Below, in pieces: positions 32,683 to 49,597 of a stretch of 64,000 bases of DNA. Both the position numbers and the translations under genes were made by a program. Positions within the stretch are counted from its first letter, which is position 1. Each line of letters opens with the position of its first letter. The stretch lies in IMG/VR virus record IMGVR_UViG_3300032242_003291, positions 186,001 through 250,000 of that record; one strand, given 5' to 3'. The notes under the pieces are model-generated. The model did not search any database and was not told the origin of the DNA. It saw nothing but the letters and a program-made list of their open reading frames with translations.

Positions 32683-32714
32683 CAAAGGTACGTCTTTTTT
32701 CTGTAACTACCAAA
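32683..32714 (-). promoter_or_regulatory. Bacteroidota primary-sigma promoter convergent with 32547-32578
   Basis: TTTG-N20-TACCTTTG on the minus strand. Confidence 0.8.
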
Positions 32715-32750
32715 TCTTTTTTTCGGGATTATTTCGTATCTTTGTACCCT

Positions 32751-33143
32751 ATGAGACTGACAGATAAGATATATAATATGGACCTATCATACAGGGTGGT
32801 GAACTTGACCATTAAGTGGTGTGAGAAGTTCTTTACTGCTCCACACATTAAAAGACGTAGGGAACTTCTTGTCATGATATATCATTCCCCCACCCATCAG
32901 GTGTTCGGACAATACTGTGATAAGAACCATTGGTTGAGTATTAACATACATAACTGTCCGACAGTTAGGGACCTTATTAAAACTACCATCCATGAATATA
33001 CCCACGTATGTCAGGACCTGAAGGAATATGCTCTTATGAATAAGATGGTGGGGTATGATAAGAATCCTCTTGAAGTCGAAGCAAGATTGAATGAGGACAC
33101 ATACTATAAGAATTGTTGGAGGAGCATTAAATCGAAGCTTTAA
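32751..33143 (+). CDS. small HExxH metallopeptidase-like protein
   Basis: TIHEYTHVCQ...YDKNPLEVEAR; -7 TATCTTTG at 32737-32744; start re-assigned. Confidence 0.7.
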   Translation: MRLTDKIYNMDLSYRVVNLTIKWCEKFFTAPHIKRRRELLVMIYHSPTHQVFGQYCDKNHWLSINIHNCPTVRDLIKTTIHEYTHVCQDLKEYALMNKMVGYDKNPLEVEARLNEDTYYKNCWRSIKSKL

Positions 33144-33387
33144 TTAACTCCTGACACTTAGCCACAATATCCTTGGGAGTAATCTCTTCCCCACCATGGA
33201 CATATAGTCCTTCCACCTTTGCATCCACACAGGCCCATCCATCTAATCCTATGGGTTTCCTTGAGAAGGACCTCTTAGCCTTCTCGAAATATAAGGTCCC
33301 TAACTCCACTTCCCCACCCATCATCGTGACCACGACCCTGATTCTGTCAGGGTCTAACTGTGTTAACTCATAAGATAATTTGTCCAT
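33127..33387 (-). CDS. hypothetical protein
   Basis: MDKLSYEL... start re-assigned. Confidence 0.65.
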   Translation of the reverse strand: MDKLSYELTQLDPDRIRVVVTMMGGEVELGTLYFEKAKRSFSRKPIGLDGWACVDAKVEGLYVHGGEEITPKDIVAKCQELIKASI

Positions 33388-33421
33388 GTGTATAAGTATA
33401 CTTACGGAACACATAAAAATA

Positions 33422-33551
33422 AAGTTATCCACAGGTGGGGAATGGTCCTGACGATATGACAGGGTGGAAAAAAAGTTGGGGATGTGGATAACTTTGGGGG
33501 TAAAATATTTGGATTTGTCAGAATGTCAGGGGACCGTTACGATGGGGATAA
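33422..33551. other. second inverted DnaA-box pair
   Basis: TTATCCACA at 33425-33433 (+) and 33483-33491 (-); TTATCCCCA at 33543-33551 (-). Confidence 0.6.
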
Positions 33552-34161
33552 TCCCTCGACACACTTTTCCCCCACTTTCTACCACTATTGTTTCCCACAT
33601 TTTACCACCGAAATAGTCCCCACGTATATAAAAACACCACTTTTTCCCCTCTGTAGGGGTCTACAGGACCAGTTTTTTACTATATATAAAACCTAGCAAA
33701 AAAAGGAGTAATAAGTGTGAGACGCGGGGAAACGAACGTAGTGAGTGTTTCATGACTATTCAGTCATGGTTTAACCCCCCTTCAAGGAGGGAACCGATAT
33801 GTTTTATTACCTCCAACGAGGTGACAACTCAGTCCCCCACTCGTGGTGGAGACCTGTAGTCTGTGATAATATATCGTGTAAATGTATGATATTTCATTTT
33901 ATCGTGGGAATCCACGATGCTTATATATCATCTCATCCACATATGTAATGTGTCATAAGTAAACTTATAGCTTGACCCGTAGGGATGTTTTGTAAAGTTA
34001 TAGCTTGACACACTATATCACATATTAAAGTCTCTTCATATATGTGGGGAATATATTTGGTGGGGGATGTTCCCGACATGGATGTCGGAGACATATGGAT
34101 ATCCATATTTATCCGCAAATATACGATTGCATATCCGATATTATGTTATACCTTTGTGATT

Positions 34162-35582: not shown

Positions 35583-36281
35583 ATGGTTAAAGATTTTCTT
35601 ACTATTGTAATCCCCACAAAAAATGAGAGTGAACTTATCGATATCACTCTTTGTCATCTGAATAAACAAACCGATATAAACGGCACTAAAGTTATAATTT
35701 GTGATTGTTCTGACGATAATACTGTGGAAGTTATTAAAACGGGTAATTACAAAAACTTAGATATTGTTTTTACTGATGGTGGACTTCCGAGCGTTGCCAG
35801 AAATAACGGTGCCAAGTTATGTGATACTCCTTATGTTTTATTCTTGGATGCTGATATCTTCTTGGTGAATATTAATACCATAAAAGATACTCTTAATCTT
35901 ATTAAGAACAATAATCTTTATTTGGTAACAACTAAGTTCAGAGTCAGAGGTATCTATTCATTTGTATTCCCTATCTTCGAATTCTTTAGAGACTTAACCG
36001 TATATAAAGCCCCATGTGCTGTCGGAGGTTTCATGCTCTTTGACATATTCGAATTTAATCGTCTTGGAGGATTTAATAATGAAGATAAGTTTGCCGAGGA
36101 CTTTCATATCAGCTTGAAGGTTAATCCATTCAGATTTCATGTATCCCCACATAAGATATACACAACAGATAGACGTTTCAAAAAGAAAGGTTTGTTCTAT
36201 ATGTTGAAGATGTCTTTCCTCTCTTATATCAATAGAGATAATCCTGAGTTCTTTAAGAACGACCACAAATATTGGAACTAA
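35583..36281 (+). CDS. glycosyltransferase family 2
   Basis: LTIVIPTKNE, ICDCSDDNT, ARNNGA, VLFLDAD, FAED. Confidence 0.9.
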   Translation: MVKDFLTIVIPTKNESELIDITLCHLNKQTDINGTKVIICDCSDDNTVEVIKTGNYKNLDIVFTDGGLPSVARNNGAKLCDTPYVLFLDADIFLVNINTIKDTLNLIKNNNLYLVTTKFRVRGIYSFVFPIFEFFRDLTVYKAPCAVGGFMLFDIFEFNRLGGFNNEDKFAEDFHISLKVNPFRFHVSPHKIYTTDRRFKKKGLFYMLKMSFLSYINRDNPEFFKNDHKYWN

Positions 36282-36383
36282 TATGGAAGATTGGATTGGA
36301 TTCTTTTATATGTTAATAATTAAAGGAATGTTATCAGCTCTAATTGTGATTGGAGTTTATGCCCTTATTAAAAGAAAAAGAAA

Positions 36384-37124
36384 ATGAATTATAAAGCCGT
36401 TGTAATGTCTGACCTTCATTTGGGTATGAAGGACTGCAAACCACAAAAGATATTGGACTTCTTGGATTCTATGAGGACCGACATCTTAATATTAAATGGA
36501 GACGTTATCGACTTTGATGCTCTTCGCAGAGGAAGCAAATGGAAAAATAAACATACAAAAGTTATTACCAAGATATTAGATATTTCTCGTCATGTTCCCG
36601 TGGTTTATATTCGCGGGAACCATGATGATGATATCCGTGAGTTCTTCGGAATGGAAATTGGTAACATACAATTTACAGATGAATATATTATTGATACTAA
36701 AGAATGGGTTGAAAATGATGTCTATCACAATAGAAGATATCTTGTTTTTCACGGTGACCAAATTGATGTCACATCCAAGTTCAAACTACTTACTCAGATT
36801 GGCTCTGTGGGCTACGACCTGGCTCTAAGATTGAATACAATCTATAACCGTTACAGAGAATGGAGAAAACTTCCTTATTATTCCATATCAAAAAGGATTA
36901 AAGAAAACTTTAAGAAAGCATTGAGCTTCATTAATAACTTTGAAGATAATGCCGTTCAGTATGGTAAAAGAAAAGGATGTAATGGTGTGATATGTGGGCA
37001 CATACATATTCCTGTGATGAAAGAAATTAACGGAGTTAACTATTATAACTCAGGTGATTGGGTTGAAAACTTTACAGCAGTTGTTCTTACTACAGATTAC
37101 AAATGGGAGTTAATTCATTTATAA
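36384..37124 (+). CDS. LpxH-like metallophosphoesterase (UDP-2,3-diacylglucosamine diphosphatase family)
   Basis: SDLHLG, NGDVID, RGNHD, FHGD, CGHIH, NSGDWVE. Confidence 0.85.
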   Translation: MNYKAVVMSDLHLGMKDCKPQKILDFLDSMRTDILILNGDVIDFDALRRGSKWKNKHTKVITKILDISRHVPVVYIRGNHDDDIREFFGMEIGNIQFTDEYIIDTKEWVENDVYHNRRYLVFHGDQIDVTSKFKLLTQIGSVGYDLALRLNTIYNRYREWRKLPYYSISKRIKENFKKALSFINNFEDNAVQYGKRKGCNGVICGHIHIPVMKEINGVNYYNSGDWVENFTAVVLTTDYKWELIHL

Positions 37125-37757
37125 ATTTTCTCTTATTATTTTACAAGGTGAACCGTACGCAATTACGTTATCGGGAATGTCTTTTGTTACGACTGAACCC
37201 GCACCTATGATTGTGTTCTTTCCTATCTTTACTTCATGTAATATGTTTGTCCCCATCCCTATTGTTGTACCTTTACCTATGGTCACGTTTCCTGCGATGT
37301 TGGTACCAGGATTGATTGAACAATAATCACTTATGATTGTATGATGACCTATGGAAACATGTCTATTAATGGATACAAAATTACCTATCTTTGTTTGTGC
37401 TGCAATTGATACTTTGGAATTGATTAATACCCCACATCCTATTTTGCTTGTATGGGAAATATCTAAACCACTATGAATTACACTAATAAACTTGTTGAAG
37501 TCAGGATTTAATTCTTGTATTATTTTTATTTTATGTTGAGGTTGATATACCCCGAGAACAAATGCTGTGTAGTCATCTAAGTTAACTTCATTCAAAACTT
37601 CTATGTTAAATCTGTCGTGATTAAACGTATTCAGTATTGGTAAATCTAAATTGTTATAGATTGTTATCTTTGGCATTTGATGAATTGAATATAAGTTATC
37701 TAATATCATCGTGACAATATTATCTCCTTTACCTATAACTAATAATTTTGTTCCCAT
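37119..37757 (-). CDS. NeuD/PglD-like hexapeptide sugar acyltransferase
   Basis: Left-handed beta-helix repeats, IGHHT, IGAGSVVTKDIP, AYGSPCK. Confidence 0.9.
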   Translation of the reverse strand: MGTKLLVIGKGDNIVTMILDNLYSIHQMPKITIYNNLDLPILNTFNHDRFNIEVLNEVNLDDYTAFVLGVYQPQHKIKIIQELNPDFNKFISVIHSGLDISHTSKIGCGVLINSKVSIAAQTKIGNFVSINRHVSIGHHTIISDYCSINPGTNIAGNVTIGKGTTIGMGTNILHEVKIGKNTIIGAGSVVTKDIPDNVIAYGSPCKIIRENL

Positions 37758-38556
37758 ATCCTTTTTTTCTTAATTCGTATGATGTGTAATGAGTCATATC
37801 TAATTCATTCATTATTCTATGTGCTCGTTTTAATAACTCTATGTTGGTTGTCTTTTCCTTATCTTTGAAATATAAGTTATCTTCTAATCCGATTCTTATT
37901 CCATCGAAATCTAACAGACCATAAGTTGTGCTTTTTAGTTGTTGTGAACCTATCCCACCTAAACAAACGTATGAATTTGTTGGTAGATTAGATTTTATTG
38001 TTGATAATGTTCCGAAGTCACACTGACCGTTATATATGTTTCCCAATATAACGTTAATGTGATATGGTGGATTTAATCTGTTCTTTGAAATAAGGTAATT
38101 GGTATAGTTTAACATCCCTGTATCAAAACATTCTATCTCAGGCTGAACCCCGTGTTTGTTCATCTCTTCTATCAAAGATAGTATCATCTCAGGTTGATTT
38201 AGAGATGCTCCTGATGGGAAGTTTAATGATGACATCGTTAATGAACCCATGTCAGGATATAATTGTAATACTTCTGCTCTTTGTTCTAATTCAGGAAAGT
38301 TTCTTCCAGTTAGTGAGACGCAAATCAATAATTCAGGACAATGTTTTTTTACACCTTCTATAATCTTTTGATACACTTCTTTCTTGTAAGTGTTCTTTAA
38401 TGTATTTTCATCCCGAGCATGTAAATGCACAATCGATATACCCACTTCATGTGCGTTATGAATTTCCTCTATTATTTCGTTCGGTAATAGTGGAGCAAGA
38501 GAATTATCCCTTGTTGTTTGAGTACCTGTTGGTGTGAAATTGATTATTTTATGCAC
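37729..38556 (-). CDS. beta-keto acid cleavage enzyme (BKACE/Kce, DUF849)
   Basis: IINFTPTG, GISIVHLHARD, PEIECFDTGM, IRIGLEDN; probable GTG start overlapping the upstream stop. Confidence 0.9.
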   Translation of the reverse strand: MHKIINFTPTGTQTTRDNSLAPLLPNEIIEEIHNAHEVGISIVHLHARDENTLKNTYKKEVYQKIIEGVKKHCPELLICVSLTGRNFPELEQRAEVLQLYPDMGSLTMSSLNFPSGASLNQPEMILSLIEEMNKHGVQPEIECFDTGMLNYTNYLISKNRLNPPYHINVILGNIYNGQCDFGTLSTIKSNLPTNSYVCLGGIGSQQLKSTTYGLLDFDGIRIGLEDNLYFKDKEKTTNIELLKRAHRIMNELDMTHYTSYELRKKGYGNKIISYR

Positions 38557-39499
38557 TTGTAATATATGATTTGATTTTGAACACTTCCCTAAATTGATTA
38601 TCGAATGCTTTTTCATAAATAACTTTTTGTGAGTTATCAACTCTTACGTGATTGATATCATCAAAAATTCCCAAAGGTCTTATGTGCCAGTGGTAAGGTT
38701 TTGTTGTTATGTTAACAATTGTAGATTTATTTACAATTACAACAATTTCTTCAGAGGTGTCTTTCACGGATTTATAAAAAATGTTCAATGTTTTGTCTGA
38801 TGGATTATAGTACAAAGTGAAATGGACCCCCCTATGAAAAACTTTATCTCCCCTTTGAAATTTATCTTCCAAAGGTTCATCTTTGAATAATATTTTTCCC
38901 GAGTTTAATAGAAGGTTTTTTGTGAAATGCTCTAATTGGGTTTCTTTCATTTTTTTCATTTCTCTTTCAATATATTCCTTGTCATAATTTTTTATTTTTT
39001 CAGGTAAAGAACTTACTTTCATAGACTTGAAAGAACCAAAAAGAAACCCGTCTTCTTGCCCATTATTAGTATAAATTACAGAATCATACCTTTCTAAAAA
39101 ATTACTATTTTCGTCAACTAAATTTTTATCTAACAGCAAACAATCATACTCGATATGATGAATATTTTGATATCCAAAATTTATTGCTATTTGGCAAGCA
39201 ATCGATAACATTCTATAAATCGCAAATCCATAAAAATATTTATTAAAAAATCTTGATTTTATTTTTGAATTTCCAAATTCGAAATACATGTAGCCTAACA
39301 AATCATAATCCTCTGAAATTTCATTTTTATAATCATAAACATAATAATGACATTTTTTTTGAATATGAATTGGAACATGCGAATGAGAAACTAACGCAAT
39401 ATGTTTACCACATTCTAAAACAGAATTAATACATTTTTCTAAAATTATTTCTTGTTCTTCTGTTGGACAATAAGCAGAAATAAAAATTAAATCTTTCAT
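38549..39499 (-). CDS. hypothetical glycan-modification protein (GT-like N-terminus)
   Basis: IALVSHS, HHIEYDC; TATTTAT at 39509-39515. Confidence 0.6.
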   Translation of the reverse strand: MKDLIFISAYCPTEEQEIILEKCINSVLECGKHIALVSHSHVPIHIQKKCHYYVYDYKNEISEDYDLLGYMYFEFGNSKIKSRFFNKYFYGFAIYRMLSIACQIAINFGYQNIHHIEYDCLLLDKNLVDENSNFLERYDSVIYTNNGQEDGFLFGSFKSMKVSSLPEKIKNYDKEYIEREMKKMKETQLEHFTKNLLLNSGKILFKDEPLEDKFQRGDKVFHRGVHFTLYYNPSDKTLNIFYKSVKDTSEEIVVIVNKSTIVNITTKPYHWHIRPLGIFDDINHVRVDNSQKVIYEKAFDNQFREVFKIKSYITSA

Positions 39500-39566
39500 T
39501 CCCCAAAAATAAATAAAAATAGTTTTTAATCAATAAAATGTTTTACCCTAAAAAGTATTTATTAAT

Positions 39567-39884
39567 ATGGACTATATTATGAACCAAAGACAACTTGATA
39601 AGTTGATGAAACCATATTGGGATATGCATTTTAATGATGCATACTTTGGTAAAGTTAATTTGAGTGGTGAAGATTGGGTAGGTTTGATTAAAAAAGATTC
39701 TAAAGGTATTCCTGAATTATTGTTGGGACATCCTGAAGATAGAGAAGAAATGATGTGGTATTGTAATGGACCAACTTTTAATGGTGGACATACACTTTTT
39801 AGTATTAAGCGTAGTGCATTTAATGAATCTATGAAAAGATATGTTAAGGATAGATTTAACATTACAACAAAAGATATTATGTAA
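39567..39884 (+). CDS. WF-family protein with degenerate leader
   Basis: MDYIMNQRQL; TLFS...MKRYVKDRF; TATTTAT at 39556-39562. Confidence 0.7.
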   Translation: MDYIMNQRQLDKLMKPYWDMHFNDAYFGKVNLSGEDWVGLIKKDSKGIPELLLGHPEDREEMMWYCNGPTFNGGHTLFSIKRSAFNESMKRYVKDRFNITTKDIM

Positions 39885-40139
39885 CTACTTCTTTTTTACC
39901 TTAACACAATTTGGGTATCTCTTTCCGAACATTGTCTTCATCCCCTTTTGAGTATATCCTTTCCAACATCTCTCAGTTATTTCTGATTCATTATTCTCAT
40001 GTTTGAAGTGTTCGTGGTCGGGCTCCATTTCGAATGCTGGTGCTGCGTAAGCCCCAACGCCTTCTTTTTCTTCTTGTTCTTTCGAAGGTAAATTGTTCTC
40101 AATGTGTTCCCTGAGTATTTTTTTGATAAGTTGTCTCAC
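39885..40139 (-). CDS. leader-bearing multi-module small protein
   Basis: MRQLIKKILREH; ITE then RCWKGYTQKGMKTMFGKRYPNCVK; TATTTAT at 40144-40150. Confidence 0.8.
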   Translation of the reverse strand: MRQLIKKILREHIENNLPSKEQEEKEGVGAYAAPAFEMEPDHEHFKHENNESEITERCWKGYTQKGMKTMFGKRYPNCVKVKKK

Positions 40140-40167
40140 AATAATAAATATCCTATATTTGAATTAG

Positions 40168-40470
40168 ATGGAAAGATTAATCAATTCTTTTTTGGAAACT
40201 AAATACACTGATAAACTCCGTATTAAAACTAGATATATTACTGAAGGTATAAAGTGTATTGAATATAATATATCATCAGGTTATGATGATATAATAACTG
40301 TTTATCTTTATTCCGAACACCAAAAAGGTTTTAAGGTTTTTGGTCCTTTAGCTAAAGAATTGGAATCATGGTTCGATATTAAATTTAGAGGGAAAGTAGA
40401 AGAGCTTGTATTCTCTTGGTGTAAAACCAAAATAGATTTTAATAATAAAAACCTAGAATATTTTGTATAG
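40168..40470 (+). CDS. WF-family protein without leader
   Basis: LESWF...LVFSWCKTK. Confidence 0.7.
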   Translation: MERLINSFLETKYTDKLRIKTRYITEGIKCIEYNISSGYDDIITVYLYSEHQKGFKVFGPLAKELESWFDIKFRGKVEELVFSWCKTKIDFNNKNLEYFV

Positions 40471-40583
40471 TGTTAATGTCTATAATGTGGATGATGTTTG
40501 TGCCAATGACGATGATGTTTTGTGGTTACACATGAAACCATTAAAATTGAAATGATTGATATTAAAAATAACTTTTTCATAAT

Positions 40584-41672
40584 TTACCAATTAAAATCTG
40601 TATTAGTATTTGTTGATTCGTAATTAATTATTAGTGGCATCCCCGTTGATATTCGTAGTCTTTTCTCTAATTCATAAGCTATATCATCAGCATCAAAATC
40701 ACCCCTCCTTATTGAAGAATAGTAAACCATAAGTTTTATATGCATGTACTTTTGTTCTATGGTCTTATTGCTATGCATAATTGTAACCCAATCCGCATCG
40801 TTAACCTCAATTTTTTCTAATTCTTCGAGTTGGTTACAATGTTCATCATTACTGTAATCAGGATAATCAATCATACCATCTTCACATTCTTTTCGAATGT
40901 GTTTTATCTCTCTATCAATAACTTCTTGGAATAATTGTCTATATTTTTGTGATTCTAAAATAAGATTATATTGTGATTCTGTTACGATGTATTTTTTTTT
41001 AGATTCTTTGATATCATCAATTAACATTGATTCGTATGGAATACCAAGTTTGTCCAAACTCCAAAGTATTTGATTATATTTTCCATCATAAAGATTTTTT
41101 GAAAAATCTTTACCTTTCCAATGTTTTGTTGGTGCTGAACGAGTAACGGCTTTGTGAATCCAACTGTCGGGACTTGAATGTTTTACGTTGTGTAATGTAA
41201 TTAAATGAGTACTAGGTTCGTTAAGAAATTTTTTATAATCTTTTGAGTTTGGGTCACCCTCAATTGCTGGTGTAACAAATACCGCGCCAGCGTCAACTAA
41301 TTTGTTTATATCAAATGGTAATCTTTCAGGAGATTCATTTCTACCCTCTTGATAATCATAAACAATTGATTCGTTCAAACCATGTGTCTCTCTATATCTT
41401 CTGTTAATGTATCCAGCAAATTTTTTATAAAGGTACCAATATAATTCGTCTTTTTCTGCAAGACTTACTTTACGACCTGTTTGTTCCCATATATAATCGA
41501 GAATTTTCTCATTCAACCAATTACACACCTCTTCCACACAATCTGTGGCATCGCTAAATGCACCCAAATCTAAATCATAATCTAATACGACGTTTAATTC
41601 ATCCAACAATTCACCATCATCCAATCTTCTTTTAACATGTGGAGACATTGACTCAAACAAAGATATTCCCAT
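40584..41672 (-). CDS. polyprotein-like three-module protein with an internal leader copy
   Basis: LFES / LNES / IKESKKKYIVTESQYNLILESQ junctions; TATTTAT at 41678-41684. Confidence 0.8.
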   Translation of the reverse strand: MGISLFESMSPHVKRRLDDGELLDELNVVLDYDLDLGAFSDATDCVEEVCNWLNEKILDYIWEQTGRKVSLAEKDELYWYLYKKFAGYINRRYRETHGLNESIVYDYQEGRNESPERLPFDINKLVDAGAVFVTPAIEGDPNSKDYKKFLNEPSTHLITLHNVKHSSPDSWIHKAVTRSAPTKHWKGKDFSKNLYDGKYNQILWSLDKLGIPYESMLIDDIKESKKKYIVTESQYNLILESQKYRQLFQEVIDREIKHIRKECEDGMIDYPDYSNDEHCNQLEELEKIEVNDADWVTIMHSNKTIEQKYMHIKLMVYYSSIRRGDFDADDIAYELEKRLRISTGMPLIINYESTNTNTDFNW

Positions 41673-41692
41673 ACAATATAAATATAGAATAA

Positions 41693-41881
41693 TTACTTCT
41701 TGTCTTCAGGTAATATTCTGAAGTTCATTACACGTTTACCATTCACTGTGGGCATACCATATTCATCTTTACCAATAGTTTTAACTGTGGTTTTTTTATT
41801 TCTGAATCTACCTGTATATATTATATCACCTACCTTCAAAGGAATATAAATGCCGTCTATTCTGTTTTCTTTTGAACTCAT
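41693..41881 (-). CDS. small basic beta-barrel-like protein
   Basis: IPLKVGDIIYTGRFRNK...KTIGKDEYGMPTVNG. Confidence 0.7.
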   Translation of the reverse strand: MSSKENRIDGIYIPLKVGDIIYTGRFRNKKTTVKTIGKDEYGMPTVNGKRVMNFRILPEDKK

Positions 41882-41898
41882 AGTTTTATTTTTAATGA

Positions 41899-42522
41899 AT
41901 GAAATCTTGGTTTGTTAACATTTCTGAACAATATAAATATTTTACATGGACCCCTGAAAGAACGGGTTCAACTCATTTTACTAATGTAATATCAAAACTT
42001 GGTTTTAAGTCTGCAGATGTTGTTGATTATAAAATTGTTTCATACGTAGATAATGTTCGTCATAATCATTTTTGTTCTCTTTTTGAAAACCATTGGGATT
42101 ATAAATTAATAATAACAACTAGGAATCCTTACTCAATGGTTATATCAAGGTCAGGTGCGTCTTCACTCAATAATATATCTGATGTTCAATCTGAAATAGA
42201 ATTAAGAATTGAAAATATGATGCAAAATCCCGTTGACAGTCCTTTTTGTTGTCAATGCTTTCAAGATAGAAAACCTGATTATTTCTTGAGGTTGGAAAAT
42301 TTATATGAGGATTGGCTCAAAATACCATTTGTTCAAACACATGAATTTAATCTTTCAGGTGAATTAAAAAAATTAACATCAATCAGGTTGAATGAACAAA
42401 AAAATACTGAAAACATTAATTATTGGAAAAAATATTACAACAAAAGGATTGCTGATTTAGTTTACTATAATTTCCCAAACAATTTCGAATTATTTGGATA
42501 TGATAAAGATTCTTGGAAATAA
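41899..42522 (+). CDS. sulfotransferase (Sulfotransfer_2-like)
   Basis: PERTGS, TTRNPYS, YFLRLENLYED. Confidence 0.75.
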   Translation: MKSWFVNISEQYKYFTWTPERTGSTHFTNVISKLGFKSADVVDYKIVSYVDNVRHNHFCSLFENHWDYKLIITTRNPYSMVISRSGASSLNNISDVQSEIELRIENMMQNPVDSPFCCQCFQDRKPDYFLRLENLYEDWLKIPFVQTHEFNLSGELKKLTSIRLNEQKNTENINYWKKYYNKRIADLVYYNFPNNFELFGYDKDSWK

Positions 42523-42524
42523 GA

Positions 42525-42965
42525 TTACATTTGGTTCAAGACCATATGTTCAATCTCATTTTTATTAATCAAATATACAGGTAAGTGTGTCAAGTGTTTT
42601 ATATTAATTGCTTTGTATAACCTATTTAATCCATCTGAAACTGATAAATTACCATCTTTTTCTTTTACCACTAATAAGGGATAAGATAAATCTGCCTTCA
42701 AAACTCTATTCTTATCGTTAGGATTACTAATGTCATAACTTAAGTCCCACCATTCCAAATTATGTTTAATTTTACTTAATGGAAATTTTTTATGTAAATA
42801 TTTTTCGGGGTTACTTTCAACAAAATCATATATGGATTTTACACTAAAAAGATTGCCATCGTCATCGGCAAATTTACTATCCTCAAAAGGTTCATTAACA
42901 TCTCTATCTAATTTATCTTCATATAAGATACTTTTGATTCTTGATATTTCTTCGTGAAGTTTCAT
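42525..42965 (-). CDS. leader-bearing ParB/Srx-like domain protein
   Basis: MKLHEEISRIKSILYE; ADLSYPLLV...SDGLNRLYKA. Confidence 0.65.
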   Translation of the reverse strand: MKLHEEISRIKSILYEDKLDRDVNEPFEDSKFADDDGNLFSVKSIYDFVESNPEKYLHKKFPLSKIKHNLEWWDLSYDISNPNDKNRVLKADLSYPLLVVKEKDGNLSVSDGLNRLYKAINIKHLTHLPVYLINKNEIEHMVLNQM

Positions 42966-43369
42966 TATTTTTCTCCGTACATTAATTCTTCATATTTGAA
43001 AAAATCTTTTTCAAATGATTTAATAAAAATACTAGCCAATACGTTAGCCATATTTTCTTCAGGTCCACCAATATCTTTTATTGGTTGGTCGTCTCTTAAT
43101 CCCATTTTTTGATGTTGATATTCATGTACCCATTCATGTGCAATTGTTTTGAGAACATCGATTAATAGACGATGTGCAGATAAAACATATATTTCATGAT
43201 TAGGAAGTCTAACTCCTGTAGTCATTGGCTCAACTCTTTTTTCTAAAAATGTAAAAGTGACATCCTCAGTAAGTTGTAGTTTGGTTTGAATAAATTTAAT
43301 AAAATCTTTAATCACTTTTATTTCGTCAGGATTAAATAACTTTTTGGTATTTTTAAGACAGACTCTCAT
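42965..43369 (-). CDS. small HExxH metallopeptidase-like protein
   Basis: TIAHEWVHEYQH...GPEENMAN. Confidence 0.7.
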   Translation of the reverse strand: MRVCLKNTKKLFNPDEIKVIKDFIKFIQTKLQLTEDVTFTFLEKRVEPMTTGVRLPNHEIYVLSAHRLLIDVLKTIAHEWVHEYQHQKMGLRDDQPIKDIGGPEENMANVLASIFIKSFEKDFFKYEELMYGEK

Positions 43370-44474
43370 GATTATAAATATCTGTAATCATTTTTAATGC
43401 CTGAGCAATTATTTGATGCATGTCGTAATACACATATGTTGCCAATCTGCCACCAAATATAACGTTTTTAAGACCCTTAGTTAGTTCGTGATACCTATTA
43501 TAGACCTGAGTGTTTTTATCGTCTCTAATTGGGTAATATGGTTCGTTATGACCATCGTATTCTTCAGGGAACTCGTAACTTATGATTGTACCTTTTTGAC
43601 CTTGATAGTCAAACCATTTATGTTCTAATATTCTGGTAAAAAGAGTTGTGGAATCTGTATAATTAACCACAGGATTACCTTGGAAATTACCTTCATCTAT
43701 CGTAACATTGGTCCAACTCAAACTTCTGTAATCTAACTTACCAAACTGATAATCAAAATATCTGTCTATCGGTCCTGTATATATTATTTTCTCTGCAAGA
43801 TTGTCATAATATTCACGGTTATCGAAATAATCTTGACCTAAAGAAACATCAATACCTTCTAACATTTTTTCAAATATTTGAGTATATCCACCTATAGGTA
43901 TTCCAGTATATTTGTCATTAAAGTAATTACTATCCCACGTGAATCTTATAGGTAATCTTTTAATAATTGATGCTGGTAATTCACTACAGGGTCTACCCCA
44001 TTGTTTAGTGGTATAGCCATTGATAAGTTTTTCGTAAATATCATCACCAACAATTGACCTTGCTTGTTCTTCGAGATTTTTAACTTCGCCTTTATACCTT
44101 TGTTTTTTGATGATTTCTTTTGCATCTTCTTCGGTTTTAACACCCCACAGTTGGTTAAAGGTCCACATGTTGAATGGGAGTGTGAACATTTCTCCGTTGT
44201 AATTCGCAATAACATTATGACTATATTGTTTAAATTCAGCAAATTGATTTATGTAATCCCAAATATATTTTTCATTAGTGTGGAATATATGTGCCCCGTA
44301 TCTGTGAACATGAATACCATTAACATTTTCAGTGTAACAATTTCCTCCAAGAGTGTTTCTTTTATCAATGACTAAACAAGATTTACCTCTCTTAGTAAGT
44401 TCATAAGCACAAACGGAACCATAAGGTCCCGCTCCTATTATGAGGTAATCATATTTTTTATCGATTAAAATCAT
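43353..44474 (-). CDS. glf: UDP-galactopyranose mutase
   Basis: IIGAG, GGNC, HRYGAHIFH, YTGPID, TRILEHK, EPYYP, GRLATYVYYDMHQ. Confidence 0.97.
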   Translation of the reverse strand: MILIDKKYDYLIIGAGPYGSVCAYELTKRGKSCLVIDKRNTLGGNCYTENVNGIHVHRYGAHIFHTNEKYIWDYINQFAEFKQYSHNVIANYNGEMFTLPFNMWTFNQLWGVKTEEDAKEIIKKQRYKGEVKNLEEQARSIVGDDIYEKLINGYTTKQWGRPCSELPASIIKRLPIRFTWDSNYFNDKYTGIPIGGYTQIFEKMLEGIDVSLGQDYFDNREYYDNLAEKIIYTGPIDRYFDYQFGKLDYRSLSWTNVTIDEGNFQGNPVVNYTDSTTLFTRILEHKWFDYQGQKGTIISYEFPEEYDGHNEPYYPIRDDKNTQVYNRYHELTKGLKNVIFGGRLATYVYYDMHQIIAQALKMITDIYNHESLS

Positions 44475-45628
44475 TTGAAATCAAATTTAATTGAATCTAA
44501 ATTAATTGAAAATTCTCCAACCTTTTTTTCTATTTTGTTTTTCCAATCAACAAGATGGTTGCTTGAATTGTAATAAGCTCTATCTTCAATAAGGAACGCA
44601 AGTGTTGGGAATGGATTAACTCTTTCAGGTTGTAACATTTTTTTAAAATGAGGAATCATTTCTTCTAACTTTCCTTTTCTTTCTAAATGTTCACACAAAT
44701 AGAGTAAATGTTCATTTCTTTGTGGTTGGAATTGTTCAGCCAATAAATAATGTTCTTCAGCAGATTTATTGTCTCCAATAAAACTATGTGCATGTCCCAT
44801 CGTACAAAGAGCAAAATAACACATTTCATCTTCATGTTTAGCAGTCTTAGAGTTAGACCAATCATGAGTTAATTCTAAAAATCTTTCATAGTACCATATT
44901 GAACGTCTAGCATATTCATCGGAATGTTTTTTACCAAAGGGTAGTTCACTTGGATTACCATAACAATCAGCATAACTTTTGGCAATATACCATAAATGAT
45001 AATAGTCTTCCAAAACTTTATTTCCAACAACCTTATCTTTCTCTAATTCCAACGCATCATTTAGAAATTTTCTTGGTACGTGCCAAGTTTCACCATCTTG
45101 TGATACCTTGTGTCTAAACCCCCATGGCATTCCAACTCTTTGAAACCCTTCTCCGATTTCAGGTAAATGAATTGTCTCGTGTCTTTTATCATGTTGGAAA
45201 AACCAAGGTAATTTAGCATTCCAAAGCCATGTTCTAAAATATTTGGTATCACCAGCTTCAGCACCAATATTGAAACTTTGTATTGATGTGTTATCAAATA
45301 TAGACCAATCAAAATCTTCATCAACATGAAGTCTTTCATCAGCATCCATTCTTAAAATCCAATCACATCCATGTAAAGTTTTAAGTGCTTCTTGCAGGGT
45401 ATGGTCTCTGTTAAATCCAGGAAAGTTCCATTCAGTAAAATAAGTAAATCCTGGTATTTTTTTTTCTTCAAAGAAATTATCAATAACTTCTTTTGTGTTA
45501 TCTTCGGTTCCATTACATTGGATTACATAATAATCTATATATGGTGCAACTGACTCCAACATTCTTGTAATGGTCTTAGACTCATTGCCGACCATAGCAT
45601 TCAAACAAATTTTTGTTTTTTTATTCAT
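44471..45628 (-). CDS. glycosyltransferase family 2 with helical/TPR-like C-terminus
   Basis: CLNAMVGNE, NRDHTL, WILRMDADE, RHETIH. Confidence 0.85.
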   Translation of the reverse strand: MNKKTKICLNAMVGNESKTITRMLESVAPYIDYYVIQCNGTEDNTKEVIDNFFEEKKIPGFTYFTEWNFPGFNRDHTLQEALKTLHGCDWILRMDADERLHVDEDFDWSIFDNTSIQSFNIGAEAGDTKYFRTWLWNAKLPWFFQHDKRHETIHLPEIGEGFQRVGMPWGFRHKVSQDGETWHVPRKFLNDALELEKDKVVGNKVLEDYYHLWYIAKSYADCYGNPSELPFGKKHSDEYARRSIWYYERFLELTHDWSNSKTAKHEDEMCYFALCTMGHAHSFIGDNKSAEEHYLLAEQFQPQRNEHLLYLCEHLERKGKLEEMIPHFKKMLQPERVNPFPTLAFLIEDRAYYNSSNHLVDWKNKIEKKVGEFSINLDSIKFDFK

Positions 45629-46868
45629 AAATGTAATTCATAACTTGTTCTTCTTTGAAGAACTTTTTAACGGGTTGATGATTCTGAAATTTATGAGAAT
45701 GTTCTCTTTCTTCATCCCAACACCAATCTTCAAATCCTAATTCTTGGATTCTTTTATGTATTGCCTTGTCATAATAATCTCTTATCAATCTGGCTCTTCT
45801 GTTTATATCTTGTGCATTATTATCAACTGTACTATTTCTATTGTTATATTGTAAGTATAACATTCGTTTTACGTGAATAAACCTTGTATGTAAAAAACTC
45901 TTAACAATCATTTCAAAATCATCAGCAACGGGGGTATTTTTGTTATGTCCACCGATTTTGTGGTAAAGATTTCTTTCCCACATTCTAACGTGGTCTGGCA
46001 TTGAAATATTGAATCTTATTGTTAAAGGATTTATATCAGGGTACCAATGAGCTAAATAATCTTTACCGTCAGCGTTAACCCATGTATGACCAGCATATCC
46101 AAAATCAAAATAGTTATCATGTCTTCCGTACCAATTACCTGACCAATCGTGGTCATATGTTTTCATTTCTCCATCATCATATAATTCACAAACATCGCTA
46201 TATAAAAATCCTGCATCAGGATGTTTTAAAATTGCGTCATTACATATCTCAAGACACTTATTTACAAATTTATCATCGTGGTCTAACTCAACCAACCAAT
46301 CGCCATCACATAACATTGCCGCCCTATGTTTAGCAAGTCCGACATTACCACCTGATACTGGTAATATTTTATGTATTTTTACCCTATAATCATTTTTAGA
46401 TATATCTTGGATAATATTCCATGTCTCATCATCAGGTGAATCATCAACAATAACCCATTCCCAATTTGTCCACGTTTGATTAACCAAACCTTGATAGGTT
46501 CTTTTAATTCTTTCTCCTGTTTGATATGTTGGAGTAAAAATTGAGAATCTCGGTCTGTTGACTTTAGTATGTCTAAAAACTGTTTGACACACTATAACAT
46601 TTGCCAACACATTATCGCCCAACATCTCATCATAATGAATGTGCATTTGTCTCAATTGGTGATGAGGAATTTCGATTAGTTCATTAAAAGATATAATTAA
46701 ATCAGGTTGATAATTTGTATAATCACCGACAACATCATTGTTATAAGGTAAAGAATAGACAACAACGTCGTCAAACAAAGATTCTTCAAAATAAACATCA
46801 GAAACTAAAGTTATTTCTCCTTTGATTTCTAGTCCATAAACAATTGCGCTTGGTTTTTTTGTCTTCAT
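45621..46868 (-). CDS. glycosyltransferase family 2 (C-terminal domain)
   Basis: FSIFTPTY, WVIVDDS, ELDHDD, VADD. Confidence 0.9.
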   Translation of the reverse strand: MKTKKPSAIVYGLEIKGEITLVSDVYFEESLFDDVVVYSLPYNNDVVGDYTNYQPDLIISFNELIEIPHHQLRQMHIHYDEMLGDNVLANVIVCQTVFRHTKVNRPRFSIFTPTYQTGERIKRTYQGLVNQTWTNWEWVIVDDSPDDETWNIIQDISKNDYRVKIHKILPVSGGNVGLAKHRAAMLCDGDWLVELDHDDKFVNKCLEICNDAILKHPDAGFLYSDVCELYDDGEMKTYDHDWSGNWYGRHDNYFDFGYAGHTWVNADGKDYLAHWYPDINPLTIRFNISMPDHVRMWERNLYHKIGGHNKNTPVADDFEMIVKSFLHTRFIHVKRMLYLQYNNRNSTVDNNAQDINRRARLIRDYYDKAIHKRIQELGFEDWCWDEEREHSHKFQNHQPVKKFFKEEQVMNYIYE

Positions 46869-47425: not shown

Positions 47426-47455
47426 AAAAAACCCCTAATCAAATGTTAGGGGTTT
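47426..47455 (-). terminator. intrinsic terminator
   Basis: aaaaacccctaa-loop-ttaggggttt. Confidence 0.7.
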
Positions 47456-48800: not shown

Positions 48801-49022
48801 TTAACTTAAATCTTTGATGATTTTAGATATCTTTTTTTCATAATATGATTTAATCATACTAAGAACATTCATTATTGCAAACAGAATGAATACCCCACCC
48901 ATTAGTCTGATTACTATGGTAGATGTGATTGGTCGAGCATAAATAAGGTAATCAAGTCCTCCGACAAGATATAGTAATGTGGTTGGAATTAACCACCAAT
49001 ATGACTTAGTAAAGTTTTTCAT
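48801..49022 (-). CDS. small two-TM membrane protein
   Basis: Two hydrophobic helices; coupled to the downstream end of the muramidase-like gene. Confidence 0.65.
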   Translation of the reverse strand: MKNFTKSYWWLIPTTLLYLVGGLDYLIYARPITSTIVIRLMGGVFILFAIMNVLSMIKSYYEKKISKIIKDLS

Positions 49023-49597
49023 TATAATTTTGTACTTGGAGTTTTACGTTTTATGATTTTTTTTTTATGTGTAGGGGTTTTTTTTGTTTTAGGTTTTATT
49101 GTTTCATCCCACTCCTTTGGTAAATCCAATCGTTTGATAATATCCTCTAATTGACGTGAATAACTCGAACCGACCTCACTGTAGGTACTATTGAGATACT
49201 TCATATATTCGTCCCTGGATGTCCTTATAATCGATTCCCTGACTGATTGTAAGAGGTAATAATCAACAACAGACATTTTCCAATTTGAATAATGAGCATA
49301 TGCACCAACTGTAGTGTCAGATGTTGAAATCCTACTATATGACCTTCTCATACCAAACAAGTTATTGTTGTTAATACAGTTTTGAGATTTGAACCATCCT
49401 GTTTCAAGGATTGCCTGAGCAACAACAATATTTTTATGTTTGAATGGGAGTGCCCATATTGTTAAAATTAAATTATCAACCGTTAAGGTATCTCCCATCG
49501 CAATTTGTGGTGCTTTAGGTCCGTTTTTCTTTTTTGTTACTTCAGTGAATGAACATGCCATTATACCAAAAGTTAATATCAATAAAAATTTCTTCAT
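49022..49597 (-). CDS. exported glucosaminidase-family (FlgJ-like) hydrolase, possible lipoprotein
   Basis: GIMAC lipobox-like; IVVAQAILETGWF...NNLFGM. Confidence 0.8.
   Translation of the reverse strand: MKKFLLILTFGIMACSFTEVTKKKNGPKAPQIAMGDTLTVDNLILTIWALPFKHKNIVVAQAILETGWFKSQNCINNNNLFGMRRSYSRISTSDTTVGAYAHYSNWKMSVVDYYLLQSVRESIIRTSRDEYMKYLNSTYSEVGSSYSRQLEDIIKRLDLPKEWDETIKPKTKKTPTHKKKIIKRKTPSTKL

What the first reader, a model, noticed from the sequence alone, without database searches (positions are those of the whole stretch)
35583..46868. Glycan-modification cluster with a BKACE enzyme fused into an acyltransferase operon
Seen: three GT2s, Glf, an LpxH-like phosphoesterase, a sulfotransferase, and an overlapping trio of unknown GT-like protein, BKACE and NeuD-like acyltransferase (39499 to 37119). 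Known: BKACEs convert a beta-keto acid plus acetyl-CoA to acetoacetate plus a new acyl-CoA, and NeuD/PglD enzymes acylate sugars. Inference: BKACE supplies an unusual acyl-CoA for a novel acylated, Galf-containing and possibly sulfated glycan on the virion, DNA or host surface.
Basis: partly seen in the sequence, partly recalled or inferred. Interest (0 to 1): 0.65.

Follow-up and report, generated by a model that had tools for sequence, protein, structure and literature searches.

The report
Phage-borne BKACE–acyltransferase amino-sugar cassette
A 317-kb freshwater jumbo phage carries a tightly coupled gene set, shared with Bacteroidota bacteria, that most likely makes a sugar with an unusual acyl group, using an enzyme family (BKACE) so far reported mainly in catabolic pathways.

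Summary
BKACE, the NeuD/PerB-like hexapeptide acyltransferase, Glf, two GT2s and a metallophosphoesterase match their families clearly. The "GT-like" 316-aa protein has a GT-A fold. The third GT2, the LpxH likeness and the sulfotransferase call are weak.

The conserved unit is the overlapping trio, not the 11-kb cluster. BKACE and the acyltransferase are adjacent in 34/34 close viral loci, in 60/68 wider viral loci, and in 43/80 bacterial loci (4 more nearby) from several phyla. Glf, the GT2s and the sulfotransferase-like gene occur in only 1–6 of 34 loci.

A half-length DegT aminotransferase follows the acyltransferase in most relatives. In this genome it lies about 80 kb away, beside a second acetyltransferase and a paralogous GT-A. 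Bacterial versions add a full-length DegT, GT2/GT56, WbqC, an ArnT-like GT-C or Amj.

The phage BKACEs form one clade with freshwater Cytophagales. Their catalytic residues are invariant, and the Kce amine-binding Glu is Gln.

Best reading: a cassette exchanged with bacteria that builds and transfers an N-acylated 4-amino-6-deoxyhexose (perosamine-type is the best guess), with BKACE supplying the acyl-CoA. The acyl group and the acceptor are unknown. I found no phage BKACE in GenBank phages or in the searchable literature.

The parts
38549..39499 (-). 316-aa GT-A-fold glycosyltransferase-like protein with a C-terminal beta domain (about 223-316); first gene of the trio
   Evidence: No Pfam, NCBIfam or PHROG hit. 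Family of ~383 clusters at 50% identity; nearest Atlas clusters are all viral; some members fused to GT1, GT9 or FkbM domains. AF2 pLDDT 94.8. GT-A fold: Z 14.7, rmsd 3.2, 171 aa to SpsA. Best BFVD hit is a 924-aa phage protein named 'glycosyltransferase Aah/TibC'. N59 and D119 invariant; H39, Y110, H114, E117 and Y118 (with D119 forming an E-Y-D motif) and E190 nearly invariant. Directly upstream of BKACE in most close relatives.
37729..38556 (-). BKACE (beta-keto acid cleavage enzyme, DUF849), 275 aa from GTG 38556
   Evidence: PF05853 204 bits. Below all NCBIfam equivalog cut-offs (Kce 174 vs 382). Best PDB 3no5 and Kce 2y7d. H44/H46/E225, E142, R221 and D226 invariant in 114 sequences; the position of Kce Glu14 is Gln13. 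Start overlaps the upstream stop by 8 nt.
37119..37757 (-). 212-aa left-handed beta-helix N-acyltransferase, NeuD/PglB/VioB/PerB-like
   Evidence: Hexapep 67 bits. TIGR03570 146.6 bits vs 160.8 cut-off. Best PDB is PerB, GDP-perosamine N-acetyltransferase (7e-20), then VioB, PglB, PglD; His aligns with the PerB residue substituted in 4eaa/4eab. ATG lies 29 nt inside the BKACE 3' end.
36384..37124 (+). Calcineurin-like metallophosphoesterase (weakly LpxH/YfcE-like), convergent with the trio
   Evidence: PF00149 53 bits. LpxH models 25-29 bits, far below cut-off. Travels with the GT2 at 35583 beside the trio in 5 of 34 loci and in L045.
35583..36281 (+). GT2 glycosyltransferase, 232 aa
   Evidence: PF00535 59 bits. 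Present with the phosphoesterase in 5 of 34 loci and in L045.
41899..42522 (+). 207-aa sulfotransferase-like protein (tentative)
   Evidence: No Pfam or NCBIfam hit. PSB/PB-like motifs. Nearest Atlas clusters are viral Sulfotransfer_2/1 families at 0.95-0.96. Homolog in only 1 of 34 loci (L023).
43353..44474 (-). UDP-galactopyranose mutase (Glf)
   Evidence: PF03275 257 bits plus NAD_binding_8. In 3 of 34 loci and in L045. Bacteroidota homologs up to 60% identity.
44471..45628 (-). 385-aa protein with a weak N-terminal GT2-like region
   Evidence: PF00535 and PF13704 at 20-21 bits, below cut-offs; phrog_13126 'beta-1,4-glycosyltransferase' 2e-7.
45621..46868 (-). GT2 glycosyltransferase, 415 aa, with a ~100-aa N-terminal extension
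   Evidence: PF00535 67 bits. TuaG-like, 60 bits.
42965..43369 (-). 134-aa protein with an HExxH-like motif; travels with Glf
   Evidence: Motif read. Homologs in 6 of 34 loci, next to Glf where Glf is present. No family hit.
40584..41672 (-). 362-aa ORF of unknown function in the variable stretch between the trio and Glf
   Evidence: No hit in Pfam, NCBIfam, PHROGs or PDB sequences. Homologs in 2 of 34 loci.

Best explanation
The overlapping genes at 39499-37119 are the phage copy of a cassette shared with Bacteroidota. The cassette builds and transfers an N-acylated amino-deoxy-sugar.

Proposed steps:
1. An NDP-4-keto-6-deoxyhexose is formed. The best guess is GDP-4-keto-6-deoxymannose, made by the phage's own GMD at ~85 kb of the genome.
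2. The 214-aa mini-DegT aminates it. This gene is at ~306 kb in this genome and directly after the acyltransferase in most relatives.
3. The BKACE converts a free, uncharged beta-keto acid plus acetyl-CoA into acetoacetate plus a non-acetyl acyl-CoA.
4. The PerB/VioB-like beta-helix acyltransferase puts that acyl group on the sugar's amino group.
5. The 316-aa GT-A enzyme transfers the finished sugar to an acceptor.

Shown here: the family identities, intact catalytic motifs, the gene overlaps, strong conserved linkage in phages and bacteria, and a clade shared with freshwater Cytophagales.

Inferred: the acyl-CoA-supply role of BKACE, the nucleotide and sugar identity, and the acceptor.

On the acceptor, the bacterial versions carry lipid-carrier or envelope parts (GT2, GT56, an ArnT-like GT-C, Amj). 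The phages carry instead a GT-A with no strongly hydrophobic segment (crude scan only), whose family is sometimes fused to GT9, GT1 or FkbM domains. I therefore lean slightly toward a phage or virion protein (about 50%) over a host envelope glycan (about 35%).
For: - BKACE 204 bits with invariant predicted Zn and catalytic residues.
- Generic BKACE chemistry (beta-keto acid + acetyl-CoA -> acyl-CoA + acetoacetate; Zn-dependent, reversible, broad scope): PMC11961710, PMC4922564, 10.1101/205583.
- Acyltransferase nearest to PerB, VioB and PglD, with the key His aligned.
- Translational coupling by overlaps of 8 and 29 nt.
- BKACE-LbH adjacency: 34/34 close viral loci; 60/68 wider viral loci, with shuffled order of DegT and GT-A; 43/80 bacterial loci within ~500 bp plus 4 nearby, in Bacteroidota, Chlorobiota, Acidobacteriota, Lentisphaerota, Omnitrophota, Planctomycetota, Elusimicrobiota.
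- Mini-DegT follows the acyltransferase in 20/35 close loci and lies within 3.5 kb in 44/71 wider viral contigs. It keeps the D-S-A and SF..K..KGG motifs. Best sequence and fold matches include GDP-perosamine synthase.
- Bacterial operons: BKACE-LbH-WbqC-DegT-GT56; BKACE-LbH-DegT-GT2-WbqC; LbH-BKACE-DegT; BKACE-LbH-miniDegT-245aa-Amj. DegT is the commonest neighbour family (10 of 112 ORFs), then GT2, WbqC, PMT_2.
- Phage GMD scores 400 bits. GMD is also present in the Pseudarcicella and Aquirufa genomes.
- All phage BKACEs form one clade with Flectobacillaceae and Spirosoma, SH-aLRT 100.
Against: - No enzyme assay exists. The acyl-CoA-supply role rests on linkage plus family chemistry.
- No conserved partner makes the beta-keto acid, so its source is unknown.
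- The acyltransferase could simply use acetyl-CoA; its nearest relatives all do.
- The mini-DegT is only ~58% of normal length and lacks the C-terminal domain, so its activity is unproven.
- In this genome the mini-DegT sits beside a different PglD-like acetyltransferase and a paralogous GT-A, so it may serve that pair instead of, or as well as, the trio.
- The perosamine assignment rests on best hits whose scores are close to those of other sugar aminotransferases and acetyltransferases. Some bacterial operons carry FdtA or GT56, which point to dTDP-sugars.
- No nucleotidyltransferase (PF00483) was found in the phage.
- About 40% of bacterial members of this BKACE subfamily lack the LbH neighbour. 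In Flavobacteriaceae a PlsC acyltransferase is the neighbour instead.
Confidence: 0.55

Rival explanations
1. The cassette does make an N-acylated amino sugar, but the acyl group is plain acetyl. The BKACE is only a metabolic helper. For example, it could run in reverse (acyl-CoA + acetoacetate -> beta-keto acid + acetyl-CoA) to top up acetyl-CoA locally, or it could remove an inhibitory metabolite.
For: All the nearest solved relatives of the acyltransferase use acetyl-CoA. The BKACE reaction is reversible (PMC10470551; PMC11961710). No conserved gene supplies a beta-keto acid.
Against: Acetyl-CoA is abundant, so a dedicated supplier that is translationally coupled to the acyltransferase and kept through shuffled gene orders in phages and many bacterial phyla is hard to justify. 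This genome also has a separate PglD-like acetyltransferase next to the mini-DegT, which suggests the BKACE-linked one does something different.
Confidence: 0.17
2. The BKACE-acyltransferase pair acylates something other than a nucleotide sugar. Candidates are an aminolipid, a peptidoglycan or lipid II-linked amine, a polyamine or another small molecule. The glycosyltransferase neighbours would then be secondary.
For: In the closest bacteria the cassette is a compact operon outside any large O-antigen locus and is followed by Amj, a lipid II flippase family. In Flavobacteriaceae the same BKACE subfamily sits after a PlsC-type lipid acyltransferase. The mini-DegT is truncated.
Against: DegT sugar aminotransferases, GT2, GT56, WbqC and FdtA are the commonest partners. 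The acyltransferase and the mini-DegT match nucleotide-sugar enzymes best by sequence, and the mini-DegT also by fold. A GT-A enzyme overlaps the BKACE in the phage.
Confidence: 0.13
3. The cassette hypermodifies phage DNA by attaching an acylated amino sugar to a modified base.
For: The phage is T4-like and encodes a thymidylate-synthase-family protein. T4-like phages are known to glycosylate DNA (own knowledge).
Against: The homologous bacterial operons are envelope-glycan type, with a flippase, an ArnT-like GT-C and GT56. The thymidylate-synthase-family match (324 bits) was not resolved further. No DNA-modification gene is linked to the cassette in any of ~100 viral loci.
Confidence: 0.03

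Closest known systems
Bacillus anthracis anthrose operon antABCD
   Same: A four-gene logic: a dedicated enzyme that prepares an unusual acyl-CoA, a glycosyltransferase, a DegT-family aminotransferase, and a left-handed beta-helix N-acyltransferase that acylates a 4-amino-4,6-dideoxyhexose. The operon is documented in PMC6947953; the enzyme roles are from my own knowledge (Dong et al.; Kubiak & Holden).
   Different: In anthrose the acyl-CoA supplier is an enoyl-CoA hydratase, not a BKACE. No sequence relationship of the supplier or the GT was tested or is expected. Here the aminotransferase is half-length, and the genes sit in a phage.
GDP-perosamine pathway (GMD, Per, PerB) of Caulobacter and E. 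coli O157
   Same: The best solved-structure matches are Per for the mini-DegT and PerB for the acyltransferase. The phage encodes a strong GMD.
   Different: PerB uses acetyl-CoA and has no BKACE partner. The phage enzymes are only distantly related (the mini-DegT is ~20-22% identical to Per in the structural alignment; PerB match E 7e-20). The nucleotide and sugar identity is not established.
Kce and the characterised BKACE family (lysine fermentation, carnitine, deoxyribonate and phloroglucinol catabolism)
   Same: Same family; HxH and Glu Zn ligands and the catalytic Glu are conserved. Same expected reaction type.
   Different: The characterised roles I found are catabolic or engineered. 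Here the context is biosynthetic. Kce's amine-binding Glu14 is Gln in the phage and Flectobacillaceae clade and Ile/Val/Leu elsewhere in the subfamily. All equivalog cut-offs are missed.
Arn (ArnB/A/C/T) lipid A aminoarabinose pathway and phage Gtr serotype-conversion cassettes
   Same: The bacterial versions of the cassette combine a DegT aminotransferase, an N-acylating step, a GT2, a flippase-family protein (Amj or Wzx-like) and an ArnT-like GT-C. This is the logic of lipid-carrier-mediated envelope decoration (own knowledge).
   Different: Arn uses a formyltransferase, not an LbH plus BKACE. The phage version lacks the membrane parts and carries a GT-A with no obvious membrane segment.
Mimivirus viosamine pathway (4,6-dehydratase, DegT-like aminotransferase, beta-helix N-acetyltransferase) for virion fibril glycans
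   Same: A virus-encoded route to an N-acylated 4-amino-4,6-dideoxyhexose alongside many viral glycosyltransferases (own knowledge; not checked with tools).
   Different: It belongs to a eukaryotic giant virus, uses acetyl-CoA and has no BKACE.

Membership tests
BKACE (Pfam PF05853 / DUF849) | Profile match above the curated cut-off | tested here: met
   203.7 bits vs 24.8 cut-off, profile positions 3-270 of 274.
BKACE (Pfam PF05853 / DUF849) | Zn ligands (Kce His46, His48, Glu230) and catalytic Glu143 present | tested here: met
   Alignment to 2y7d. H44, H46, E225 and E142 are invariant in 114 phage and bacterial sequences. Residue roles partly from own knowledge; Zn dependence from PMC11961710.
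[quoted passage not shown] | Glu14 that binds the substrate 5-amino group; equivalog score | tested here: not met
   Gln13 at that position (role of Glu14 from PMC10470551). NF052387 scores 174 bits vs 382 cut-off.
BKACE (Pfam PF05853 / DUF849) | Beta-keto acid + acetyl-CoA -> acyl-CoA + acetoacetate activity | not testable with these tools
   Needs an enzyme assay.
NeuD/PglB/VioB/PerB sugar N-acetyltransferases | Subfamily profile above cut-off | tested here: inconclusive
   TIGR03570 scores 146.6 bits vs 160.8 cut-off, matching profile positions 42-202 of 202.
NeuD/PglB/VioB/PerB sugar N-acetyltransferases | Left-handed beta-helix with the catalytic His | tested here: met
   Hexapep 67 bits over 4 stretches. 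His aligns with the PerB residue replaced in the 4eaa and 4eab entries.
NeuD/PglB/VioB/PerB sugar N-acetyltransferases | N-terminal nucleotide-sugar-binding domain (PglD_N type) | tested here: inconclusive
   ~90 N-terminal residues are present, but PglD_N was not detected. VioB aligns from residue 48. The genome's second acetyltransferase does hit PglD_N.
NeuD/PglB/VioB/PerB sugar N-acetyltransferases | Acetyl-CoA as donor | not testable with these tools
   The hypothesis is that it uses another acyl-CoA; this needs an assay.
GT-A glycosyltransferases | GT-A (nucleotide-diphospho-sugar transferase) fold | tested here: met
   Model pLDDT 94.8. VIA Z 14.7/14.6/14.5 to SpsA, a Leptospira GT and WrtF, and TarP over residues 1-219. 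Foldseek prob 1.0.
GT-A glycosyltransferases | DxD-type metal and nucleotide-sugar motif; membership of a named GT family | tested here: inconclusive
   A nearly invariant E117-Y118-D119 follows a beta strand, but no Pfam GT family matches even at E<=10. Nucleotidyltransferases share the fold. There is no Gly-rich N-terminal loop (read from the sequence).
DegT/DnrJ/EryC1 sugar aminotransferases (mini-DegT, outside the window) | Profile above cut-off and the PLP-lysine motif | tested here: met
   PF01041 52 bits vs 19.8 cut-off. Invariant SF..K123..KGG and D98-S-A. Fold matches GDP-perosamine synthase, PseC and ArnB, TM 0.6-0.69 normalised to the model.
DegT/DnrJ/EryC1 sugar aminotransferases (mini-DegT, outside the window) | Full two-domain ~370-aa architecture | tested here: not met
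   208-215 aa in phages and in Aquirufa and Arcicella. Profile positions ~99-163 and 246-360 are missing.
Sulfotransferases (ORF 41899-42522) | Match to a sulfotransferase profile | tested here: not met
   No Pfam or NCBIfam hit at E<=10 or E<=1. Only motifs and language-model neighbours support the call.
LpxH (UDP-2,3-diacylglucosamine diphosphatase) | Equivalog score | tested here: not met
   29 and 25 bits vs 134 and 190 cut-offs. Only the generic Metallophos family is met.

The most novel reading that the evidence does not exclude
BKACE has an unrecognised biosynthetic role. Coupled to a PerB/VioB-like acyltransferase and a DegT aminotransferase, it would define a widespread, undescribed pathway that puts a non-acetyl, uncharged acyl group on amino-deoxy-sugars. 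Candidates include a hydroxyacyl group such as 3-hydroxybutyryl or glyceryl, or a short alkyl acyl group. The pathway would act on envelope glycans in Bacteroidota and other phyla. Freshwater jumbo phages would have exchanged the cassette with Cytophagales, swapped its membrane glycosyltransferase for a GT-A with no obvious membrane segment, and used it to decorate their own virions or to rewrite the host surface during infection.
Probability: 0.45. Interest if true: 0.72.

Novelty: new variant of a known kind. Interest (0 to 1): 0.62.

Why it matters
- Every characterised BKACE role I could find in the held papers is catabolic (lysine fermentation, deoxyribonate, phloroglucinol) or engineered. 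An anabolic BKACE feeding a sugar N-acyltransferase would be a new use of the family. It could also explain how some of the unusual N-acyl groups seen on bacterial amino sugars are made.
- The pairing is common. It occurs in dozens of species-level bacterial genomes across at least seven phyla and in more than 60 jumbo-phage contigs, so a single biochemical study would annotate many genes.
- For phage biology it is a new kind of auxiliary gene. There was no BKACE in 50,697 GenBank phage records.
- It sits in a phage with an unusually large glycosylation repertoire: about ten GT or GT-like genes, GMD, SDR enzymes, Glf, an FkbM methyltransferase and two amino-sugar acyltransferases.
- The shared clade with Flectobacillaceae also gives a testable host prediction for an uncultured jumbo-phage lineage.

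Tried and rejected
- DNA and protein searches of 50,697 GenBank phages with the trio, BKACE and the 316-aa protein found nothing. The acyltransferase found only distant hits.
- PHROGs was uninformative for the trio.
- PDB sequence searches were empty for the 316-, 362- and 207-aa ORFs.
- Literature searches linking BKACE or DUF849 to phage, O-antigen, capsule or glycosyltransferase found no relevant paper. This shows absence only in the held library.
- WbqC literature was uninformative, and WbqC was not found in the phage.
- The Kce structure paper is not held. The role of Glu14 was taken from PMC10470551 instead.
- The bacterial 240/245-aa partner is not related to the phage GT-A family by hhalign or to the phage 254-aa ORF.
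- unk207 is not similar to the Pseudarcicella Sulfotransfer_4 neighbour.
- The L035 281-aa upstream ORF is not a member of the 316-aa family.
- The Atlas structure library was unavailable.
- The sigma-70 promoter scan found no more sites than shuffled sequence (70 vs 76), so it gives no operon boundaries.
- Only table 11 was used. No frame needed another genetic code.
- The idea that the 11-kb region is one conserved glycan cluster was rejected on conservation counts.

Full report
**Context.** The window is bases 186001-250000 of a 317,259-bp IMG/VR virus record that CheckV rates as complete. GC content is about 31%. The genome encodes a T4-type Gp23 major capsid protein. The nearest named capsids are only 42-44% identical: uncultured huge phages, Microcystis phage Mel-JY01 and Flavobacterium phage immuto. 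This is therefore an uncultured T4-like jumbo phage.

**Observation.**
- Clear family matches: GT2 (35583-36281), metallophosphoesterase (36384-37124), hexapeptide transferase (37119-37757), BKACE (37729-38640; 204 bits), Glf (43353-44474; 257 bits) and GT2 (45621-46868).
- The acyltransferase scores 146.6 bits on the NeuD/PglB/VioB model, just under its 160.8 cut-off.
- Its nearest solved relatives are PerB (GDP-perosamine N-acetyltransferase, 7e-20), VioB, PglB and PglD. The His that aligns with the PerB residue substituted in entries 4eaa/4eab is present.
- The 316-aa 'GT-like' protein has no sequence-family hit.
- An alignment of 89 relatives gave a pLDDT-94.8 model. Residues 1-222 are a GT-A fold: Z 14.7, rmsd 3.2 over 171 residues to SpsA, with similar values to TarP and WrtF (Foldseek). 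A C-terminal beta domain follows.
- Weak items:
  - The third GT2 (44471-45628) is below threshold.
  - The 'LpxH' likeness rests on 29 bits against a 134-bit cut-off.
  - The 'sulfotransferase' (41899-42522) has no profile hit. It is supported only by PSB/PB-like motifs and by viral Sulfotransfer_2 neighbours in the ESM Atlas.

**Gene junctions.** The BKACE most likely starts at GTG 38556 and overlaps the GT-A stop codon by 8 nt. The acyltransferase ATG at 37757 lies 29 nt inside the BKACE 3' end. The genes overlap but are not fused.

**What is conserved.** The BKACE has many 83-90% identical relatives in metagenomes. They lie on phage-like contigs.
- In 34 related loci, tblastn finds BKACE and the acyltransferase in 34 of 34, always adjacent. 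The GT-A is found in 32 of 34.
- The GT2s, phosphoesterase, Glf, sulfotransferase-like gene and the other ORFs occur in only 0-6 of the 34.
- The conserved unit is therefore the trio, set in a variable region.
- A wider scan found 71 viral contigs with BKACEs of 44-88% identity, many of them 200-335 kb long.
- Counts in those 71 contigs:
  - The acyltransferase is immediately downstream in 60 of the 68 with enough flanking sequence.
  - A 214-aa 'mini-DegT' lies within 3.5 kb in 44.
  - The GT-A is adjacent in 24.
  - Gene order varies: DegT can lie before BKACE or between BKACE and the acyltransferase, and the GT-A can follow DegT.
- Linkage that survives such rearrangement points to selection for co-inheritance.

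**The missing partner.** In 20 of 35 close loci the mini-DegT follows the acyltransferase directly.
- In this genome it lies at about 305.9-306.6 kb. Beside it are a PglD_N-plus-hexapeptide acetyltransferase (192 aa), a 321-aa paralogue of the GT-A (24-31% identical) and a 254-aa ORF.
- One relative (L020) has all of these genes together.
- The mini-DegT passes the DegT cut-off and keeps an invariant D-S-A and SF..K..KGG.
- Its best sequence and fold matches include GDP-perosamine synthase, followed by PseC and ArnB.
- It lacks about 40% of a normal DegT, including the C-terminal domain.
- The phage also encodes a strong GMD (400 bits) inside a second glycan operon at 76-93 kb. That operon has GT4-like, GT2_5+GT4, GT2, FkbM, GT11 and GT10 genes and several SDR enzymes.
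- GMD, a Per-like aminotransferase and a PerB-like acyltransferase together make a GDP-perosamine-type route the best single guess. The scores do not exclude dTDP- or UDP-sugars.

**Bacterial origin.** A scan of one genome per species found 80 bacterial loci with BKACEs 44-75% identical to the phage enzyme.
- The nearest are freshwater Cytophagales: Pseudarcicella hirudinis 59%, Arcicella 60%, Aquirufa 55% and Spirosoma 56%.
- In 43 loci a homologue of this acyltransferase lies within about 500 bp of the BKACE, and in 4 more it lies within 4 kb.
- These loci come from Bacteroidota, Chlorobiota, Acidobacteriota, Lentisphaerota, Omnitrophota, Planctomycetota, Elusimicrobiota, Verrucomicrobiota and an actinomycete MAG.
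- Per-gene annotations:

| Organism | Gene order |
|---|---|
| Membranihabitans | BKACE, LbH, WbqC, DegT (375 aa), GT56 |
| Omnitrophota MAG | BKACE, LbH, DegT (405 aa), GT2, WbqC |
| Elusimicrobia MAG | LbH, BKACE, DegT (378 aa) |
| Aquirufa | BKACE, LbH, mini-DegT, 245-aa protein, Amj |
| Pseudarcicella | BKACE, LbH, 240-aa protein; convergent Sulfotransfer_4 gene |

- The 240- and 245-aa proteins are 40% identical to each other. They carry a 'LLDDDT' motif and a hydrophobic C-terminal stretch, which looks GT-A-like by eye only.
- Among 112 neighbouring ORFs from 21 loci, DegT is the commonest family (10). Next come GT2 (6), WbqC (4), ArnT-like PMT_2 (4), Amj (2) and FdtA (2).
- This is the gene content of an envelope-decoration pathway for an N-acylated amino sugar.
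- The Pseudarcicella and Aquirufa genomes also have strong GMD homologues.
- In an IQ-TREE phylogeny of 103 BKACEs, all 26 phage sequences fall in one clade (SH-aLRT 100). The clade also holds Flectobacillaceae, Spirosoma, a Prolixibacteraceae MAG and two short MAG contigs that may themselves be phage.
- This indicates gene exchange with freshwater Cytophagales and suggests the host lineage. The direction of transfer inside that clade is unresolved.

**What the BKACE can and cannot be.** BKACEs convert a beta-keto acid plus acetyl-CoA into an acyl-CoA plus acetoacetate. They are Zn-dependent, reversible and broad in substrate scope (PMC11961710; PMC4922564). Documented products include 3-aminobutyryl-CoA, acetoacetyl-CoA, formyl-CoA and, by proposal, glyceryl-CoA.
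- The predicted Zn ligands and catalytic residues are invariant in all 114 sequences of this subfamily, so the enzyme is very likely active.
- Kce Glu14 binds the substrate's 5-amino group and is Trp in triacetate lyase (PMC10470551).
- That position is Gln in the phage and Flectobacillaceae clade and Ile/Val/Leu elsewhere.
- All NCBIfam equivalog cut-offs are missed.
- It is therefore not Kce, and a positively charged substrate is unlikely.
- A polar uncharged substituent in the phage clade, and a hydrophobic one in the others, is a reasonable inference but an untested one.

**Mechanism and target.** The best explanation and its rivals are given in their own sections. What is shown: the identities, intact motifs, coupling, conserved linkage and shared clade. 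What is inferred: that BKACE supplies the acyl donor, the sugar identity and the acceptor.
- The bacterial cassettes carry lipid-carrier or periplasmic components.
- The phage cassettes carry instead a GT-A for which a crude hydrophobicity scan found no strongly hydrophobic segment.
- That GT-A family is sometimes fused to GT9, GT1 or FkbM domains. Its best viral structural match is a phage protein named after the Aah/TibC protein heptosyltransferases.
- No PF02397 phosphoglycosyl transferase was found in the phage. Other initiating enzymes and Wzx/Wzy were not searched.
- This tilts me slightly toward a protein or virion acceptor, but host-surface remodelling remains plausible.
- DNA is unlikely.

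**Novelty.** I found no BKACE in 50,697 GenBank phage records and no paper in the held library linking BKACE or DUF849 to glycan biosynthesis or to phage. The logic of a dedicated acyl-CoA supplier plus DegT, an LbH N-acyltransferase and a GT is known from the anthrose operon. I therefore rate this a new variant of a known kind, widespread in bacteria and newly seen in phages.

**Limits.**
- The search for homologous proteins sees only proteins of 0.55-1.75 times the query length, so fusions were found through the exhaustive representative search instead.
- Adjacency counts rest on tblastn HSPs and on contigs that are often cut at their ends.
- Anthrose, Arn and Mimivirus enzyme roles are from my own knowledge.
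- Only genetic code 11 was used.

Noticed in passing
window 55716-56133 (-): A full-length GOLLD RNA (Rfam RF02032, 325 bits against a gathering score of 150, model positions 1-416) lies about 760 nt from the tRNA-Met at 56893-56965. GOLLD is a large structured RNA of unknown function known from lake metagenomes and phages. Its presence fits a freshwater origin.
   Followed up: no
outside the window: G000:C1 about 76-93 kb (locus L043): A second, tightly packed glycan operon. It holds a GT4-like gene, a 542-aa GT2_5+GT4 fusion, a GT2, an FkbM methyltransferase, GT11 and GT10 (fucosyltransferase families), two SDR epimerases, GMD (400 bits), a 317-aa unknown, another SDR, PhoH and a GT2. A PolB-like exonuclease and a dUTPase sit at its start. 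It suggests phage-made GDP-fucose-type sugars and fucosylation.
   Followed up: partly
outside the window: G000:C1 about 305.3-308.4 kb (locus L044:6346-9428, - strand): A paralogous cassette: a 254-aa ORF, a 321-aa paralogue of the 316-aa GT-A (24-31% identical), the mini-DegT (214 aa) and a PglD_N+hexapeptide acetyltransferase (192 aa). The phage may make two differently N-acylated versions of one amino sugar, each with its own GT-A.
   Followed up: partly
locus L135 (Algibacter marinivivus) and other Flavobacteriaceae loci L093-L126: In Flavobacteriaceae the same BKACE subfamily (45-48% identical to the phage enzyme) has no LbH neighbour. It follows a PlsC-type acyltransferase and overlaps an unknown 226-aa ORF. 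So BKACE again sits beside an acyltransferase, but a lipid-type one.
   Followed up: partly
window 42965-43369 (-): A 134-aa ORF with an HExxH-like motif (HEWVHEYQH) has no family hit. It travels with Glf in related phages.
   Followed up: no
window 32001-34000: A GC-rich island (0.41 against ~0.31 for the rest of the window). The 203-aa ORF at 32532-33143 has no PDB sequence match, and no Rfam family matches there.
   Followed up: partly
window 47429-47455: A strong bidirectional terminator-like hairpin (10-11 bp stem, 4 G-C pairs, T-runs on both sides) lies between the glycan region and the NlpC/P60 (47473-47958) and glucosaminidase (49022-49597) cell-wall hydrolase genes.
   Followed up: no
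loci L002-L005 (related phage contigs), positions about 9842-11044: In some relatives the trio is followed by a 105-aa ORF and a Y-family (IMS/DinB-type) DNA polymerase instead of the phosphoesterase and GT2. This shows how variable the flanks are.
   Followed up: no
loci L048 and L049 (short contigs binned into Bacteroidales and Saprospiraceae MAGs): These carry BKACE-LbH-miniDegT at 65-75% identity to the phage and group with the phage sequences in the tree. They are probably phage fragments mis-binned into MAGs.
   Followed up: no
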